Shown: positions 26,517 to 33,041 of the stretch, in pieces
Layout of the letters: each line of letters opens with the position of its first letter
Position numbering within the stretch: position 1 is the first letter of the stretch
Source of the DNA: Vitrella brassicaformis CCMP3155
Taxonomy: Eukaryota > Protista > Chromerida
Length of the DNA stretch: 64,000 nucleotides
Assembly (NCBI GenBank): GCA_001179505.1
Contig: CDMY01000347.1
Coordinates: 248,001-312,000 of the forward strand
Direction of reading: 5' to 3'
Translations under genes and position numbers: made by a program
Notes under the pieces: model-generated
The model's input: the letters and a program-made list of their open reading frames with translations, nothing else
The model's database searches: none
What the model was told of the DNA's origin: nothing

Positions 26517-27652
26517 TGTCATGTGCGCTGAGTGTTAGCAGCGTTGTGCAAGTGTGTGCAAGTGAGCAATGGTTTCACTGTGTCGCGACTGATGTCCGTG
26601 CAGAGTGTTAGCTGACATGAATGAAGCGCACTGTGTCCCGCAGTTCAAATCAAGCATCAAGACGTCACTCATGCACTCACTCCACAGCCGCCACGTACAC
26701 CTGATCCGACAGCCAGCCACGACACCACGAGGTCATCACCTCACGACACGGGCGTCCGGATCTCACGACCTAACACCCGGGACGTCAGGTGCAAGTTCGC
26801 AAGGAATCGTTAGCCGACTGATCGAATCGCTGCAGTGACATTCATACCAGCGTCAATCAAGGCGGCTTTCCTTATGTCGAGTAGCGAGACACTGCACAAT
26901 CAAGAAGGCAGGAAGGAGGAAAGAAGGAAGGAAGAGTCACCATACATAAACTCGTCGTCTCACACGCACGCACACATGGACATGACATGCACACGGGCAG
27001 ATGAACACGCATCGACCACACCGACCGGCAAGGTCGCATGAAGCCCCCGGCCCGCGGGGGTTGCGAATAAAGTTGTACCGTTGTTGCTTACAAGAGGCCT
27101 CAAAAGACAGACACCTCTCAACGAAAAAACGTTGTCTGCCTGCCCCCTACCCCACTGCCCATCCTTGCCCCTCACTACCCCTTGATGAGAGGTATGAGAT
27201 AAGTGACGTGCGCATCCCGGGGCCGTCGAAAAAACCGCCGCACAGAGAGACCACACGAGAGAGATAAAGACGAAAGGAACCAAAACGAGACAGAGAATGC
27301 GAGAGCACTGCCACAAATGATGTGGCCAGACAGACAGAAAGAGAGAGACTGAGAGGCAGGCAGGCAGGTAGAGGGAGGGAGGGCAGAGAGCATTAGGACG
27401 GACACCCCCACCCGGCTCAAACACCTCCCCATAGACAGGGAGCTGCCGGGCAAAAACGCAAAACATGTGATGCGATGCTGCGATGCTGGAGAGGGAGAGA
27501 GGGCCGCATGAACGAACGCACTCACTACATGACACACCGCACACACCCACAGACTAGACGAACCTACCTAACCCACATTCATCCACTCTGCACGCACTTA
27601 TGCATCCCATCAGCACACAGCACGTCAGTCAGTCAGGAGTCTCCCCTCAGAC

Positions 27653-29066
27653 TCAGAACGAGCACGAAGGCCCATCACAGCTGCGGAACTGGCCCTGCCC
27701 GAAGAAGCGAGAGCGACCCAAGGACACGATGCCCTCTGCAACACAACACAGACACACACATGCCAGAGGCCATATAATGACCGTGTCTGGTGTGATGCAT
27801 CACATCACACTGGGTGCATACCGCTGCCGTAGATTCTGCCCGTGTTGAAGTTGACATTGCTGCCGATGCCGCGTGGCCCAGTGTTGTAGGCCGGCCCGAC
27901 GATTGAGCTTCTCGCCTGCAGGCGTCGCTCGTCGGACTCCTCCTTGGTCGGCTCCTCCTCATTGACGATCTGGGCGACGGCGCAGTAGCCGTTGACCTCG
28001 GGGATGCCGTCGCCACAGCCGCCCTCTGGCTTGGGGCGGAAGAGGAGCGCCTCGTCCTTGGACACTTCCAGGTAGTCGCCGCCGAAGAAGTCGATCTTGA
28101 TGGAATCGTGCTTCTTGTTGCGGGTCACCTGTGAGTCACAGGCAGGCAGACAGCGAGAAATGAGGTAGGGGTGCGTATTCGGGGCTTGTGTGTCATCAGA
28201 TGCTTTACCATTCGGACTTTGTAGACCCTCTGGAGGAACTCCTTGACGCCCTCCGAGGAGCCGACACCCAGGTCGTCCAGATAGAGACTGTCAATCTGCG
28301 CACACGCGACCACACCAGCAAAGGTGTGCTTTGGGTGTAGAGGCGCATCCCGGATGTGTGTGTGTGTCCGTGTGTGTGTGCGTACATTCTCAAAATTGGA
28401 CAGGTCCTGTCCGACGAAATCGAAGGGATTGACCGCATCGATCTTGCTCTTGGTGTCTGCACACATCACATACGCCCACATACACACAGACAGATGATGC
28501 ACAGGCCCATCTCCCCCCCCTCTATGCATGTGGATGCATTGACTTACGAACGACGTCCTTGTTGCCGGATACGCTGATCAGGTTGCCATCCGCGTCAGGT
28601 CGCTGGTCCTTGGTGACCTCGACGGCAGCAACGGTGACGCCGAGCAGCACCAAGATGGTCGCCACATACAAAATCGCCAAGCCCGCCACAACCCACTTGA
28701 GGCTGCGGGTCTTCTTCTTCTCCATGTTCATCTGGCGGGCGGCCGACAACACCTCCTGGACGCTGCAGGCACCCACAGACAACAGGCACACACACGAGAC
28801 ACGTGACAGATGTCACTCGGCCCGTCTCCCCTCCCCCTCTCTCACCTGAACATGCCATCGCCGTCAGTGTCCCAGGAGCGGAGGATGTCCACCATGCGCT
28901 CCGCCTCATCCTTGCTGCCTTCCGTCTTGAGAGCGGAGGCCCTGAACAGACAGAGAGACAAGACCCCCCGCCGCGTGTGCGTGTGCGGGTGTGCGCACGC
29001 GCTGGATCTGGATCTGTGTGCATACCGGAACTTCTCAGTTCTGCTGTTGGGCGGGGCAGTGGCCAT
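27653..29066 (-). CDS. EF-hand / single-TM / RRLQ-peptide protein, paralog A
   Basis: MATAPPNSRTEKFR|ASALK..WDTDGDGMF|SVQE (canonical EF loop), TM helix WVVAGLAILYVATILVLLGVTVAAV, luminal region, then RRLQARSSIVGPAYNTGPRGIG..GS|EGIVSLGRSRFFGQGQFRSCDGPSCSF*. Confidence 0.85.
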
Positions 29067-29636
29067 CTCGGTTGCGATTGCTGAGGGAGTGTTGATCAGA
29101 TGCGAAGTCACTTGAGAGGTCTCGGGGAAGCTGAGATGCGATGTGGCGATGATAGATCTGTCGTGAATGCAATGAGAGATGTGCGATGGGAAGAGTGTTG
29201 TCGAGTGTTGTCCAAACCTCCGCCCCCTCAGTCTTCCCTCCTTTCCCAATCCTTCGCAACCCTACCCTAACCCTGTAACCCCGTGTAAAACTTCTACAGC
29301 AAAAGCTGTCATTCACTTCTTCCTTCGTCGTTACTCCTGCCCCACTCACCCACCCTGATCCATAGCATTTCGCTGCTGCACCATGAAGCCCGGCGTGCCA
29401 GGATCCCGTACTGAGAAGTTCAGGGCGTCCGCTCTCAAGACGGAAGGGAACAAGGATGAGGCGGAGCGGATGGTGGACATCCTCCGCTCCTGGGACACTG
29501 ACGGCGATGGCATGTTCAGGTGAGAGAGGGGGAGGGGAGACGGGCCGAGTGACATCTGTCACGTGTCTCGTGTGTGTGCCTGTTGTCTGTGGGTGCCTGC
29601 AGCGTCCAGGAGGTGTTGTCGGCCGCCCGCCAGATG
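28729..29636. repeat. Perfect 167-bp inverted repeat (28729-28895 vs 29470-29636) shared by the two paralogs, including an entire intron
   Basis: Direct reading: ATGGTGGACATCC...GCCCGCCAGATG is identical on opposite strands, including the intron GTGAGAGAGGGG...GGTGCCTGCAG. Confidence 0.92.
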
Positions 29637-30855
29637 GCCCAGGAGAAGAAGACGAGCCACCGCCTCCGATGGGTCATAATCGGCATCGCCATCGTGTACA
29701 TCGCGACCCTCCTCGTGCTGCTGGGGGTTACAGTATTGGCCGTCGAGATCTCCAAGGACCAGCGACCTGACGGAAACAGCAACCTGATCAGCAGACACAC
29801 AAAGGACGTCGTTCGTAAGCCGACACACAAACCTGCCCTGCGGGGGGATGGGGGTTGTGCGCTGCCTGACTGGTGTGATGTGGTGTTGTGTGTCTGTCGT
29901 CTCATTAGACACGAAGAGCAAGGTTGACACTGTGAACCCGTTTGACTTTATTGGCGACGACAAGGACCTCACCGACTTCGAAAATGTACAGTCAGTACAC
30001 CATCCCCCCCCACACACACAACTTGGACGGCAGGGCACCCACTCCACTGCACCTGCACCCTGTGCTGCCTGTGCTGTGTGTGTGTTGTGTGCAGGTCGAC
30101 AACCTGTACATCGACGAGCTGGGTGTCGCCGCCACCGAATCTTCCGACGGCGTGCCAGAGTTCCTCGAGAGACTCTACAAAGTCCAGATGGTGAGTGACC
30201 CCCCAAGCCACCATGCACACCAGACACTCACGTGTCTACCTGTCTGTCTGTCTGTCTGTCTCTGTCAGATCACGCGCAACAAGAAGCACAACACCTACCG
30301 CATCGACTTCCTGGGCGGCCACTGGCTGGAGGTGTCCAAGGAACAGGCCATTCTCTGGCGCCCCAAGCCAGAGGGCGGCTGCGGTGAGGGCATTCCCGAG
30401 GTCAACGGCAACTGCCCCTCGGCCGTCATCCAAAACAAGGAGGAGAGTGAGATGGAGGTGGTGGATGCCTTTGAGCAGGTCGACGCTGAGGACAAGGCCG
30501 ACAGCGACGACCGACGCCTGCAGCCCCGGTCGGCCATCGTCGGGCCGGCCTACAACACTGGGCCGCGCGGCATCGGGCGCAATATCAACTTCAACTCTGG
30601 CCAACTCTACCAAAACGGTTAGCAGAGAGCCGCACACACACATCGGCATCGATCAATCCCTCCGTGTGTGTGTGTGGATGTGTCTGTTCAGATGGCATTG
30701 TGGACCTCGGCCGCGCGCGGTTCTTCTCGCACGGGCAGTTCAGGTGAGGAACGAAGACACACACTTGAGCGACAGACAGCTCACCTCTCTCTGTTGCGGT
30801 GTCTTGCCTGTCTCCTTCCTGCAGATCTTGCATCGGCCCTTCGTGCTCATTCTGA
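29383..30855 (+). CDS. EF-hand / single-TM / RRLQ-peptide protein, paralog B
   Basis: MKPGVPGSRTEKFRASALK..DTDGDGMF|SVQE, TM helix WVIIGIAIVYIATLLVLLGVTVLAV, then RRLQPRSAIVGPAYNTGPRGIG..QN|DGIVDLGRARFFSHGQFR|SCIGPSCSF*. Confidence 0.85.
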
Positions 30856-33041
30856 GCCAGCATCTCTCACGGGGCCGATAGCATACACAGCAGGGTAGAA
30901 TGACATCGCTTTGAGCGCTTCTTTATAAGTCTATTTTTCGGTCCTGCTGACCGATTCGTTGACGTGTGTGTACTCCAGCCATTACACTCCATTGCACTCC
31001 ATAACATTCCACTGCATGTGTGTGTGAGGGGGCGGGCGGGGGGCACACCAGCCGCGTAGTCGCGTACAAGCGTTGACACACCATGACACCTCAATGGATG
31101 CATGGATGGATGGATGGATGGCTCGCCCTGTGTCTTTGTTGCTTTCTGTATCGCCTATCCTTTTGCCTGCGACACCCATCGATTGCCCTTTTTTGGCTGG
31201 CCCACCTTTGAGGCAGCCGACAGTCACATGAATCGTGTTGTGTGCTCGTTGTGCCGTCATGCTCATGCGTGTGGGTGAGGTGAGGAGGTGAGGAGGTGTG
31301 CCCTCACCAGTCAGCTCATGACACGCCGGCAGTGTGCCCCTCCCCACCCCCACCGACTTCATAAGGGTATTTTTATTGCCCTCTCGCCCCCGGCTGGCTG
31401 GGAGGGAGGGAGGGAGGGAAGAGGGCGTGGCAATTGTCTTGATCGATCTCATGGATGGCTCATGTTCGTTGCACTGCAACCAGCACGCGCGGCATGCCAT
31501 CCACAGACCGACCCGACCGACTCGACTGATGTGATGTGCTCATAAGACACATACATACGATGACTGAGTGCATCTGCCTTACTGCCTGCCTGCCTGTGTA
31601 TCTATCGGTTGCCTGTCGCTCTTCTGATCTTTCCTCCTCCCCTCTCTCTCTCCTCTCTCTCTCTGTGGATGCGACTCCGACGCGAGGGAGGGAGGGGGGA
31701 GGGAGGGGGGGAGGGAGAAACGAAGGATGGGGATGGAGTGCAGATGCGGCTCTCATGGTATGATCGCTCACCATCTGTCTCGTCTGTCTGTCTGCCTGTG
31801 TGTGGTTTTACATTCGTGTCGATTGCGTGTTCTACTGTTCCTTTATCTATCCAGTCTATCCATTCCGCACACACACCATGGCCGGTTGGGGTGCATGAGC
31901 GACCGGCGACGACGACTTACTACTGTAATTTATGGGACGCCGGGAGGGGTGATGGGTTGTGGGCAATCGTAATCGTTCAGCCATCTCACTCACTCTGACT
32001 TGCCTGCAGCCTACGGCTCTTCTCAGTGCACTACGTCATCATTACATTACATCGGGTTTAGTTCCCATTGCACCGACCGGGATGCGCTAATTTGTCACAT
32101 CTGCATGCCTGTGTATGTGTCCGTCTGCCTGTCTGGTAATGCTGTTGATACGTCACGGCTCAACTTGCCTTGCCTGCCTGGTCGATTGTGGATGTGTTGA
32201 TCGGATGCATGACTTGAGATGTTGCATGTGACGACTGAGCGAAGGAGAGAGGAGGGCAGGGGAGGTGCGCGGCCGGCGCACCGAGCAGTGTGTGTGTGAG
32301 TTGTTGGCGACAGCCACGATCGATGCTTGCATGGACGGCTGTGTACGTGGACTTGTAGGTATCGATGCTAACGCTTTTATTTTGGGGGTGGGTGGCGTGC
32401 GTCTTTCTCGTAAGGCGAGCCGGGTGTCGATTACGCCGGTCAGTACGTCTTGGCTTTTGTATGGGTGGGCGGATGGATGGGTGTTCCTGACGCCTTGGTC
32501 TGTCAGCCTGCAGCGTTCTCATCTCCCTGCGTCAAGAGTCAGAGCTGGACTAGACTGTCAGCGTACGAGCTTGACGGTTGAGTACAGCAGGGGCTGCGGA
32601 CGGAAGGGGCGGAGAATGCCGGGCAGACGACGCGCGTATCATTATGGAAGGAACCGCAGCTTTTCTATTATGGATGTGTTGGTTCGTTGCCGCCCTCCTT
32701 TCGTCGGTGCCATGGACGTGGTCGAACGCATCAGGGTCACCTTCATCTGTGACACTGGCGCATTCGAGGCACTCATTGCACCGGCGAGAGTGTGTGGCGG
32801 AACAAGTTTCGCTGTCGGAAGGAAGAGTCCTGACACGCAGTAGTGGTAGTGCGTTGGATGCTTCGTGTGCGTGGATGGGTACCAGTGACGTCAGTCGAGT
32901 GCATAAGGGGACGGATGAGAAGAGACCGACATATATACGATAATGCTCTGGATCGGGGTGCGTATACTGGCCGCGAGGAGCGGGCCGGGCCGACACCCTC
33001 AGGTTGGGGGCCGCCCGCAGTCTCAGTCATCTCGCGGGAGA

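What the first reader, a model, noticed from the sequence alone, without database searches (positions are those of the whole stretch)
27653..30855. Divergent paralog pair resembling Ca2+-linked, membrane-anchored precursors of a conserved processed peptide
Seen in the sequence: both genes encode a canonical EF-hand loop (DTDGDGMFSVQE), one TM helix, a moderately diverged luminal domain, a variable acidic spacer, RRLQ, and a ~58-aa Gly/aromatic/Arg-rich tail. The tails are far more conserved than the spacer. A: ARSSIVGPAYNTGPRGIGSNVNFNTGRIYGSEGIVSLGRSRFFGQGQFRSCDGPSCSF. B: PRSAIVGPAYNTGPRGIGRNINFNSGQLYQNDGIVDLGRARFFSHGQFRSCIGPSCSF. Both end in CxGPSCSF, a possible disulfide loop. The full tails appear only after manual splicing and are absent from the ORF track. 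Established: an acidic propiece plus a basic processing site plus a conserved mature peptide is the layout of secreted peptide precursors, and RRL sites are subtilisin/SKI-1-type cleavage motifs. Inference: a type II membrane precursor with a cytosolic Ca2+ sensor releases a signalling, antimicrobial or wall-structural peptide. I recognise no named family for it.
Basis: partly seen in the sequence, partly recalled or inferred. Interest (0 to 1): 0.85.

Follow-up and report, generated by a model that had tools for sequence, protein, structure and literature searches.

The report
Calcium-linked membrane precursors with conserved tail
Two head-to-head genes of the coral-associated alga Vitrella belong to an undescribed family of about a dozen single-pass membrane proteins whose best-kept part is a short basic end piece behind an Arg-x-Leu-Gln site, which is the layout of a precursor cut to release a peptide, although cutting has not been shown.

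Summary
Gene A (minus strand, 299 aa) and gene B (plus strand, 317 aa) each have seven GT-AG exons. Their start codons lie 316 bp apart. Transcript contigs and transcript-derived proteins confirm the tail exons. The genome is Vitrella brassicaformis, and B is already annotated (CEM04111.1, "EF-hand domain-containing protein").

The pair belongs to a Vitrella family with at least 8 tail-bearing loci plus more divergent ones, and one unassigned environmental transcript. No Pfam, PDB or fold match covers the luminal domain or the tail.

Across the family the tail is the most constrained segment: 25 of 58 columns are invariant. Between A and the C964 copy, dN/dS is 0.09 in the tail and 0.37 in the luminal domain, with saturated dS. 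The spacer is acidic and varies in length. R-x-L is kept in all members and is followed by Q in most.

A distant homologue of the N-terminal module also carries RRLQ ahead of a different C-terminal piece. The genome encodes a plasmepsin V/ASP5-type protease, and R-x-L-Q also recurs in the linkers of a Kazal polyprotein.

The precursor reading is plausible but cleavage is untested. The pairwise "tail far more conserved" claim is weak for A versus B. The identical EF-hand region reflects gene conversion. Earlier notes of this scan report RxL(Q) linkers in other Vitrella genes.

The parts
27653..29066 (-). Gene A: 7 exons, 299 aa. Exons 29066-29026, 28941-28846, 28762-28548, 28456-28386, 28295-28209, 28128-27822, 27735-27653.
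   Evidence: Model built. Joints seen in transcript contigs. The C-terminal 183 aa are identical to the MMETSP transcript protein P0002.
29383..30855 (+). Gene B: 7 exons, 317 aa (equals P0014, CEM04111.1). Exons 29383-29519, 29603-29814, 29909-29985, 30095-30190, 30269-30617, 30692-30743, 30825-30855.
   Evidence: Model built. Joints seen. The annotated protein was found.
29067..29382 (.). The 316-bp interval between the two start codons, a presumed shared bidirectional promoter. The 5' UTR of A reaches at least 29255.
   Evidence: contig piece 29025-29255. Promoter function is inferred.
29494..29612 (+). EF-hand loop of B (residues 38-49), split by intron 1: 29494-29519 plus 29603-29612.
   Evidence: Sub-threshold Pfam EF-hand hits.
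28753..28871 (-). EF-hand loop of A (residues 38-49), split by intron 2: 28871-28846 plus 28762-28753.
29470..29636 (.). Gene-conversion tract: 167 nt 100% identical to 28895-28729 of gene A, including the complete 83-nt intron.
   Evidence: pS = 0 over codons 30-57.
29670..29744 (+). Transmembrane helix of B (residues 69-93), preceded by a Lys/Arg-rich stretch.
   Evidence: Read from the sequence. AF2 models a long helix over residues 47-97.
28621..28695 (-). Transmembrane helix of A (residues 69-93).
29814..30433 (+). Luminal domain of B (residues 117-229, exons 2-5), with the conserved Cys pair C212/C223.
   Evidence: AF2 gives beta strands over 145-229 at pLDDT about 80. Conserved cysteines.
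27964..28548 (-). Luminal domain of A (residues 118-225), with Cys pair C208/C219.
30434..30511 (+). Acidic spacer of B (26 aa; net charge about -10 over residues 226-255).
27928..27963 (-). Acidic spacer of A (12 aa).
30512..30523 (+). RRLQ motif of B (residues 256-259), the candidate processing site.
   Evidence: R-x-L is kept in all family members.
27916..27927 (-). RRLQ motif of A (residues 238-241).
30524..30852 (+). Tail of B (residues 260-317, 58 aa, net charge +4), coded by 30524-30617, 30692-30743 and 30825-30852. Ends C-I-G-P-S-C-S-F.
27656..27915 (-). Tail of A (residues 242-299, 58 aa, net charge +4), coded by 27915-27822 and 27735-27656. It is 91% identical to the tail of the unlinked C964 paralogue.

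Best explanation
A and B are a locally duplicated, head-to-head pair. They belong to an undescribed Vitrella multigene family of type II (N-in, C-out) single-pass membrane proproteins.

The cytosolic N-terminus carries one EF-hand-like Ca2+ site. The C-terminal part enters the secretory pathway.

Proposed mechanism (inferred): an endoprotease of the ER or Golgi cuts at the conserved R-x-L(-Q) site that follows the acidic, length-variable spacer. The cut frees a strongly conserved, basic peptide of about 58-61 aa with a short C-terminal disulfide loop. The EF-hand, TM helix and luminal domain stay behind as an anchored pro-region.

The most likely protease is the plasmepsin V/ASP5-type enzyme encoded in this genome. 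If the cut falls after Leu, the new N-terminal Gln could cyclise to pyroglutamate.

Shown here: the architecture, the splicing, the expression as RNA, the family, the selection pattern, the motif conservation, and the presence of candidate enzymes.

Inferred only: the topology, Ca2+ binding, cleavage, release, and what the peptide does. A conserved ligand or a self-assembling structural unit seems more likely than an antimicrobial.
For: - Gene models and spliced transcripts.
- Family in the same genome: at least 8 tail-bearing loci (C347 x2, C223 x2, C964, C271, C821, C460), plus divergent copies on C259 and C829 and a copy cut off at its contig end on C420.
- Segment conservation: the tail has mean pairwise identity 0.69 with 25 of 58 columns invariant. 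The luminal domain has 0.48 with 14 of 104. The spacer has 0.17, is 8-24 aa long, and has net charge -3 to -10. The tail has net charge +1 to +8.
- The tail is better kept than the luminal domain in 26 of 28 pairs.
- Between A and C964 the tail is 91% identical at dS of about 1.1, giving dN/dS 0.09 against 0.37 for the luminal domain. The conservation is therefore purifying selection, not gene conversion.
- R-x-L sits at a variable distance (4-6 residues) before the tail core in all 8 aligned members. R-R-L-Q and R-Q-L-Q are kept in the divergent C259 and C829 copies, whose tails differ strongly.
- P0016, from a marine metatranscriptome, shares only the EF-hand/TM/juxtamembrane module (hhalign probability 98.4%, E 6e-15). 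It still has RRLQ 41 aa before its end, followed by an unrelated tail. The chance of this is about 0.001.
- Four conserved cysteines lie C-terminal of the TM helix, and basic residues lie on its N-side.
- The genome encodes an aspartyl protease whose best solved relatives are plasmepsin V (E 4e-39; next family 3e-7). It also encodes glutaminyl cyclase.
- R-x-L-Q is enriched ahead of Kazal domains in an unrelated Vitrella polyprotein locus: 5 observed against 0.48 expected, P about 0.0008.
- Literature: TgASP5 cuts RRLxx, including sites far from the N-terminus (PMC4764566). RXL is a proposed processing site of diatom secretory proteins, with the protease unknown (PMC5647440, PMC5525289).
Against: - No protein-level data exist. 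Cleavage, release and Ca2+ binding are all unobserved.
- The P2 residue varies (R, Q, F, K), so most paralogues do not fit the strict ASP5 motif RRL. The PEXEL P2' E/Q/D is absent.
- AF2 gives no confident structure for the tail, either in the whole protein (pLDDT 31-38) or alone (43.7). A folded peptide is therefore not supported.
- Between A and B themselves, the tail is not clearly more constrained than the luminal domain.
- One paralogue (P0009) lacks the EF-hand, and one (P0010) has a degraded tail.
- The EF-hand is single and below the curated thresholds.
Confidence: 0.5

Rival explanations
1. The protein is not cleaved. It is a type II membrane protein whose conserved C-terminal 58 aa form a tethered interaction or assembly motif, for example one that binds a wall polymer, a luminal receptor or another copy. 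The acidic spacer is only a flexible linker, and R-x-L-Q is part of that motif.
For: - The tail is always C-terminal and always linked to the same luminal domain in Vitrella.
- No free-standing tail gene was found in the genome.
- AF2 sees the tail as disordered, as for many tethered linear motifs.
- No cleavage data exist.
Against: - The distance between R-x-L and the tail core varies, and the preceding spacer varies freely. This suits a site in a linker better than a structural residue.
- RRLQ recurs in P0016 before an unrelated C-terminal piece.
- R-x-L-Q also recurs in Kazal linkers.
- An acidic spacer balancing a basic tail is typical of pro-regions (own knowledge).
Confidence: 0.3
2. Cleavage occurs at the same site but is done by a site-1-protease/SKI-1-like subtilase. 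That enzyme recognises R-x-hydrophobic-x and would cut after the Gln, as in plant RALF or SREBP-type substrates.
For: - R-R-L-Q, R-Q-L-Q, R-F-L-Q, R-R-L-G and R-R-L-A all fit R-x-L-x with Arg at P4 and Leu at P2. The S1P consensus is taken from own knowledge.
- P0012 also carries RRLL just upstream.
- The genome has more than 20 S8 subtilase loci.
Against: - No S1P orthologue was identified here; this was not tested.
- Gln at P1 is, to my knowledge, not a described S1P site.
- A plasmepsin V-type enzyme, which needs exactly Arg at P3 and Leu at P1, is clearly present.
Confidence: 0.12
3. The released tail is an antimicrobial peptide, and the acidic spacer neutralises it until secretion.
For: - The tail is basic and rich in Gly and aromatic residues. 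It has a C-terminal disulfide loop and is paired with an anionic spacer.
- This resembles the propiece logic of defensins and cathelicidins and the C-terminal loop of some frog peptides (own knowledge).
Against: - Tails of unlinked paralogues are 88-91% identical, with dN/dS 0.09-0.15. Host-defence peptides usually diversify (own knowledge).
- Net charge is only +1 to +8, and no amphipathic structure is predicted.
Confidence: 0.08

Closest known systems
TEXEL/PEXEL substrates of apicomplexan ASP5 / plasmepsin V, for example Toxoplasma MYR1, which is cut at an internal RRLSE
   Same: - An Arg-x-Leu site in a protein of the secretory pathway, which can lie far from the N-terminus (PMC4764566).
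- The organism is a close free-living relative of apicomplexans and encodes a plasmepsin V-type protease.
   Different: - The motif here is R-x-L-Q, with a variable P2 residue and no acidic or amide residue at P2'.
- There is a signal anchor instead of a signal peptide.
- The product would be a small conserved peptide, not a host-directed effector.
- Cleavage is not shown.
Type II membrane precursors that release a C-terminal peptide: ITM2B/Bri2 (Bri23 peptide) and chondromodulin/tenomodulin precursors (own knowledge)
   Same: - N-in, C-out single-pass anchor, a luminal domain, a basic processing site near the C-terminus, and a short C-terminal peptide with a disulfide.
   Different: - No BRICHOS domain was found.
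- The site is not a furin R-x-K/R-R site.
- The cytosolic part carries an EF-hand.
- There is no sequence or fold similarity.
RXL-domain proteins of diatoms: silaffins, silacidins, cingulins, Sin1, SAPs
   Same: - Arg-x-Leu (often RRL) is a proposed endoproteolytic site in secretory and membrane proteins, with the protease unknown (PMC5647440, PMC5525289).
- Acidic and basic segments are fenced by such sites.
   Different: - In diatoms the RXL domain usually follows the signal peptide, and the products are biosilica-associated.
- Vitrella makes no silica.
- There is no sequence relationship.
Plant RALF peptide precursors, cut by S1P at RRxL (own knowledge)
   Same: - A basic, cysteine-bridged mature peptide of about 50 aa at the C-terminus of a precursor.
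- It is preceded by an RR-x-L-type site, and it is encoded by a multigene family.
   Different: - RALF precursors are soluble and have a signal peptide.
- They have four cysteines in a different pattern.
- No homology was detected.
Unnamed EF-hand/TM proteins of marine algae (Atlas look-alike clusters; P0016; contig L021)
   Same: - The EF-hand, basic stretch, TM helix and juxtamembrane E-x-x-K-D-x-[RK]-P module are homologous to P0016.
- The whole protein has look-alike clusters (score 0.96) in diatoms, haptophytes and green algae.
   Different: - The luminal domain and the tail have no look-alikes and no profile match.
- The C-terminal pieces differ.

Membership tests
EF-hand Ca2+-binding domain | 12-residue loop with ligands at positions 1, 3, 5 and 12 and Gly at position 6, flanked by helices | tested here: met
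   D-T-D-G-D-G-M-F-S-V-Q-E is present in A and B, and equivalent loops are present in 6 of 8 family members. AF2 places helices on both sides.
EF-hand Ca2+-binding domain | Curated thresholds: Pfam gathering score and the PROSITE PS00018 pattern | tested here: not met
   The best Pfam hit is EF-hand_6 at 16.4 bits against a cut-off of 25. PS00018 fails because position 8 is Phe or Tyr.
EF-hand Ca2+-binding domain | EF-hands occur in pairs | tested here: not met
   Only one loop per protein. Pairing by dimerisation is possible but untested.
PEXEL/TEXEL substrates (plasmepsin V / ASP5) | Arg at P3 and Leu at P1 (R-x-L) | tested here: met
   All 8 aligned members and the C259, C829 and C460 copies have R-x-L before the tail.
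PEXEL/TEXEL substrates (plasmepsin V / ASP5) | Arg at P2 (TEXEL, RRLxx), or E/Q/D at P2' (PEXEL) | tested here: not met
   P2 is R in A and B but Q, F or K in other paralogues. P2' is A, P, S or L. Motif definitions are from PMC4764566.
PEXEL/TEXEL substrates (plasmepsin V / ASP5) | A cognate protease is present in the organism | tested here: met
   An open frame at G000:C688:132567-133730 (minus strand) has plasmepsin V structures as its best solved relatives (E 4e-39; next family 3e-7).
PEXEL/TEXEL substrates (plasmepsin V / ASP5) | Cleavage after Leu is demonstrated | not testable with these tools
   Needs proteomics or an in vitro assay.
S1P/SKI-1 substrates | R-x-(hydrophobic)-x site, with cleavage after the fourth residue | tested here: inconclusive
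   The sequence fits R-x-L-x. Gln, Gly or Ala at P1 is unusual (own knowledge). The genome has more than 20 S8 subtilase loci, but S1P orthology was not tested.
BRICHOS / ITM2 type II precursors | BRICHOS domain between the TM helix and the C-terminal peptide | tested here: not met
   No Pfam hit at E up to 10 on exons, or up to 1 on whole proteins. The luminal domain is modelled as all-beta and has no significant fold match.
Secreted peptide precursor (generic) | Entry into the secretory pathway | tested here: inconclusive
   There is no signal peptide. There is a single TM helix with Lys/Arg on its N-side and conserved Cys pairs on its C-side. The topology is inferred.
Secreted peptide precursor (generic) | The mature part is more conserved than the pro-region, and the processing site is conserved | tested here: met
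   for conservation. for the site.

The most novel reading that the evidence does not exclude
R-x-L(-Q)-directed proprotein processing by a plasmepsin V/ASP5-type protease would be a general secretory maturation system of free-living chromerids. This family would then be its membrane-anchored, Ca2+-sensing prohormone-like substrates. That would mean the PEXEL/TEXEL cleavage machinery of malaria and Toxoplasma parasites existed, with endogenous peptide precursors as clients, before parasitism. It would also mean the EF-hand/TM module is a reusable anchored pro-region for different cargos in marine algae.
Probability: 0.25. Interest if true: 0.85.

Novelty: new variant of a known kind. Interest (0 to 1): 0.6.

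Why it matters
It is an open question what plasmepsin V/ASP5 and the RxL motif did before apicomplexans became parasites. Vitrella is a free-living photosynthetic relative of apicomplexans.

This family offers concrete, testable candidate substrates. It is expressed and multicopy. It has an invariant R-x-L site in front of a strongly selected 58-aa peptide, and the same genome carries a plasmepsin V-type protease.

The combination of a cytosolic EF-hand, a type II anchor and a releasable C-terminal peptide has, to my knowledge, not been described. It would link Ca2+ signals to the handling of a secreted peptide.

If cleavage does not occur, the finding shrinks to an uncharacterised lineage-restricted membrane protein family.

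Tried and rejected
- **Pfam on exons and whole proteins:** only sub-threshold EF-hand hits and TM noise.
- **PDB profile search of luminal domain plus tail:** 0 hits at E up to 10.
- **AF2 of whole B:** mean pLDDT 56.5, with only the TM helix and a small beta domain confident.
- **VIA-align search of 48,161 chains:** best Z 5.7 and 5.5 (RQC component, VirK), both below the noise level the tool states, so no fold assignment.
- **AF2 of the tail alone:** pLDDT 43.7.
- **Complex prediction with three copies of the tail:** no verdict; this counts neither for nor against self-assembly.
- **Exhaustive phmmer with exon 5 of B:** the top hit P0008 (2178 aa, 30 weak repeat matches) is a repetitive bacterial-type protein with no real relationship, and was rejected.
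- **Profile search of 5.8 billion proteins:** nothing beyond Vitrella.
- **First metagenome scan with the tail pattern:** nothing.
- **Second metagenome scan with the N-terminal module:** two relevant contigs (L020, L021) and three unrelated multi-EF-hand proteins.
- **hhalign of the luminal-plus-tail profile against P0016 and L021:** not significant.
- **Atlas search of residues 118-317:** no usable hit.
- **Literature search by accession numbers:** no paper.
- **Joined spliced models:** the models of A and B were used only inside scripts (translation, dN/dS, tree). Searches used single exons by reference, or database proteins (P0014, P0002 and others).
- **S1P orthology among the subtilase loci:** not pursued.
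Full report
**1. Observation**

I read the region 27000-31500 and rebuilt both genes in scripts.
- Gene A lies on the minus strand. It has 7 exons spanning 29066 to 27653 and encodes 299 aa.
- Gene B lies on the plus strand. It has 7 exons spanning 29383 to 30855 and encodes 317 aa.
- All introns are GT-AG. The start codons are 316 bp apart, head to head.

The ORF list shows only fragments, so the tails do need splicing to be seen. A has an extra 5' intron. B has an extra intron inside the tail, between F-R and S-C.

**2. Expression and splicing**

Contigs of three runs skip exactly the predicted introns. This includes the tail introns: 27735|27822 in A, and 30617|30692 and 30743|30825 in B.

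The database holds transcript-derived proteins that end in the spliced tails. P0002 (MMETSP) is gene A. P0001 (JGI) is gene B. B is fully annotated as P0014 (CEM04111.1, A0A0G4EYU1, "EF-hand domain-containing protein") from Vitrella brassicaformis CCMP3155. The genome has 72.7 Mb in 1064 contigs, and the window is C347:248001-312000.

The refutation criterion "terminal exons not spliced as predicted" is therefore not met.

**3. The pair itself**

A and B are each other's closest relatives (support 100/100), and B sits on the longer branch (0.34 against 0.04).

A 167-nt stretch is 100% identical between the two genes and includes the whole 83-nt intron (29470-29636 in B, 28895-28729 in A). Synonymous divergence over codons 30-57 is zero. 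This is a recent gene-conversion tract, so the identical EF-hand loops are not independent evidence.

For A against B:

| Segment | aa identity | dN/dS |
|---|---|---|
| Tail | 74-76% | 0.30-0.33 |
| Luminal domain | 68-69% | 0.21-0.26 |
| Spacer | 50% | not comparable; lengths differ |

Within this pair the tail clearly beats only the spacer.

**4. The family**

Searching the genome with the C964 paralogue P0004 and with its tail found tail-bearing copies at these loci:
- C347: A and B
- C223: a second head-to-head pair, P0005 and P0010
- C964: P0004
- C271: P0012
- C821: P0009
- C460

More divergent copies lie on C259 and C829. A further copy on C420 is cut off by the end of its contig after the start of the luminal domain, so its C-terminal part could not be read. 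The C259 and C829 tails are recognisable but strongly changed. They still begin with R-R-L-Q or R-Q-L-Q and end with a Cys loop followed by S-F.

One further member, P0011 (347 aa), comes from an intronless transcript contig of an unrelated run. It is at most about 50% identical to anything in this genome, so it belongs to another organism.

No member was found in any other named organism. The searches were an exhaustive phmmer of 1.84 billion representatives, two single-sequence searches and one profile search. The first metagenome scan also found nothing.

**5. Conservation by segment**

Results for 8 aligned proteins:

| Segment | Mean pairwise identity | Invariant columns | Notes |
|---|---|---|---|
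| Tail | 0.69 | 25 of 58 | net charge +1 to +8 |
| Luminal domain | 0.48 | 14 of 104 | |
| EF-hand region | 0.56 | | |
| TM region | 0.36 | | |
| Spacer | 0.17 | | 8-24 aa, net charge -3 to -10 |

The tail is better kept than the luminal domain in 26 of 28 pairs. The exceptions involve P0010, whose tail is degraded.

The tails of A and of the unlinked C964 copy are 91% identical while dS is about 1.1. This gives dN/dS 0.09, against 0.37 for the luminal domain. A against C271 gives 0.15 and 0.39. The conservation is therefore purifying selection on the peptide sequence, not homogenisation.

**6. The site**

Every aligned member has R-x-L 4-6 residues before the I-V-G-P core. The variants are RRLQ, RQLQ, RFLQ, RRLG and RRLA. 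P0012 has RRLL and RQLQ in series. The variable distance, and the freely varying spacer in front, suit a site in a linker.

The second metagenome scan used the N-terminal half as query. It found P0016 (288 aa, marine metatranscriptome contig L020). P0016 shares the EF-hand, TM helix and juxtamembrane module (hhalign probability 98.4%, E 6e-15) but not the luminal domain. It nevertheless carries RRLQ 41 aa before its C-terminus, followed by a different tail with three S-A-P-W-A-H-I-G units. In shuffles of its luminal part, RRLQ appears with P of about 0.001 and R-x-L-Q with P of about 0.03.

Earlier notes of this scan report R-x-L(-Q) linkers in other Vitrella genes. I checked one of them in part. 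In the Kazal-domain locus C193:13000-20500, open frames containing Kazal cores hold 5 R-x-L-Q motifs against 0.48 expected (P of about 0.0008). Most lie 16-56 residues before a Kazal core.

**7. Candidate enzymes**

Among the pepsin-family loci of the genome, one open frame (C688:132567-133730, minus strand) has plasmepsin V structures as its best solved relatives by far (E 4e-39; the next family is at 3e-7). Two other loci look like ordinary pepsins.

- ASP5 of Toxoplasma cuts RRLxx after Leu, needs P1-P3, tolerates changes at P1' and P2', and cuts sites far from the N-terminus, such as in MYR1 (PMC4764566).
- Plasmepsin V needs RxLxE/Q/D (same paper).
- Diatom RXL domains are proposed cleavage sites with an unknown protease (PMC5647440, PMC5525289).
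- The genome has more than 20 S8 subtilase loci. I did not test for an S1P orthologue.
- Glutaminyl cyclase genes are present, so a Gln exposed by a cut after Leu could be cyclised. This is inference only.

**8. Structure and known families**

Pfam gives only sub-threshold EF-hand hits, in 6 of 8 members. The strict PROSITE pattern fails at loop position 8.

AF2 models a helix-loop-helix, a long TM helix and a small beta domain (residues 145-229, pLDDT about 80). The tail is left unstructured. No fold or sequence match to solved structures is significant.

The Atlas lists look-alike clusters (score 0.96) for the whole protein in diatoms, haptophytes and green algae. It lists none for residues 118-317. 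The N-terminal module therefore seems widespread, and the luminal-plus-tail part seems lineage-restricted.

**9. Reading**

The best-supported explanation is a family of type II anchored proproteins. A secretory endoprotease would cut at R-x-L(-Q) and free a conserved basic peptide of about 58-61 aa with a C-terminal disulfide loop. I put this at about 0.5.

The main rival is an uncleaved protein with a tethered C-terminal motif, at about 0.3.

The identity of the protease (plasmepsin V-type or S1P-type), the role of the EF-hand and the function of the peptide are all open. Near-identical, strongly selected tails in many paralogues argue for a specific partner or an assembly role rather than host defence.

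**10. Novelty**

The genes are annotated but unnamed, and I found no paper on them. The general kind, a membrane-anchored precursor that releases a C-terminal peptide, is known from Bri2 and chondromodulin (own knowledge).

The new elements are the cytosolic EF-hand, the R-x-L-Q site and the peptide itself. I rate this a new variant of a known kind, with interest 0.6. The interest lies mainly in providing testable endogenous candidate substrates for a pre-parasitic plasmepsin V/ASP5-type pathway.

Noticed in passing
window 29470-29636 and 28729-28895: A 167-nt tract is perfectly identical between the two inverted genes, covering parts of two exons and the whole 83-nt intron. The flanks are 87% identical. 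This is a recent gene-conversion event between head-to-head paralogues.
   Followed up: yes
G000:C223:77247-80822 (L014): A second head-to-head pair of family members (P0005 on the minus strand, P0010 on the plus strand) has first coding exons about 325 bp apart. In the tree A and B are sisters, so the two pairs were not copied as a unit after the A/B split.
   Followed up: partly
G000:C688:132567-133730 (L029:1568-2731, minus strand): A plasmepsin V/ASP5-type aspartyl protease open frame in this free-living alga. Its best solved relatives are 4zl4 and 8tyf at E 4e-39.
   Followed up: partly
L021 (JGI contig Ga0138258_1517724), 14-613 and 390-2276: The EF-hand/TM/juxtamembrane module is followed, in another frame (frameshift or intron), by a 628-aa open frame. 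That frame contains RRKLL and then a class 3 lipase domain (Pfam E 2e-16). The same anchor module may carry an enzyme as its C-terminal cargo.
   Followed up: partly
L020 (JGI contig Ga0138347_10163527), 75-941 = P0016: The tail after RRLQ consists of three S-A-P-W-A-H-I-G units around a G-I-V-G-L-S-G stretch, which faintly recalls G-I-V-S-L-G-R of the Vitrella tails.
   Followed up: no
window 27822-27969 and 29752-30454 (run X3): A sediment metatranscriptome holds spliced contigs 95-99% identical to both genes. The differences from B are mostly at third codon positions, plus one replaced codon (30365-30367). A close relative of Vitrella therefore expresses these genes in the environment.
   Followed up: partly
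window 28457-28547 and 29815-29908: The transcript-derived proteins P0002 and P0001 begin with residues translated from intron 3 of A and intron 2 of B. Transcripts that retain these introns, or unspliced RNA, therefore exist in the source data.
   Followed up: no
P0006 versus P0005 (locus C223): A JGI transcript protein lacks 24 residues of the luminal loop, including the second conserved cysteine. It may be an alternative splice form.
   Followed up: no
G000:C193:13000-20500 (L036): A multi-Kazal locus with R-x-L-Q (RQLQ twice, RILQ, RALQ, RGLQ, and also RMLQ and RELQ in neighbouring frames) shortly before Kazal domains.
   Followed up: partly
G000:C378:72049-72708 and C780:18777-19988: Two loci encode plant/bacterial-type glutaminyl cyclase (PF05096).
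   Followed up: no
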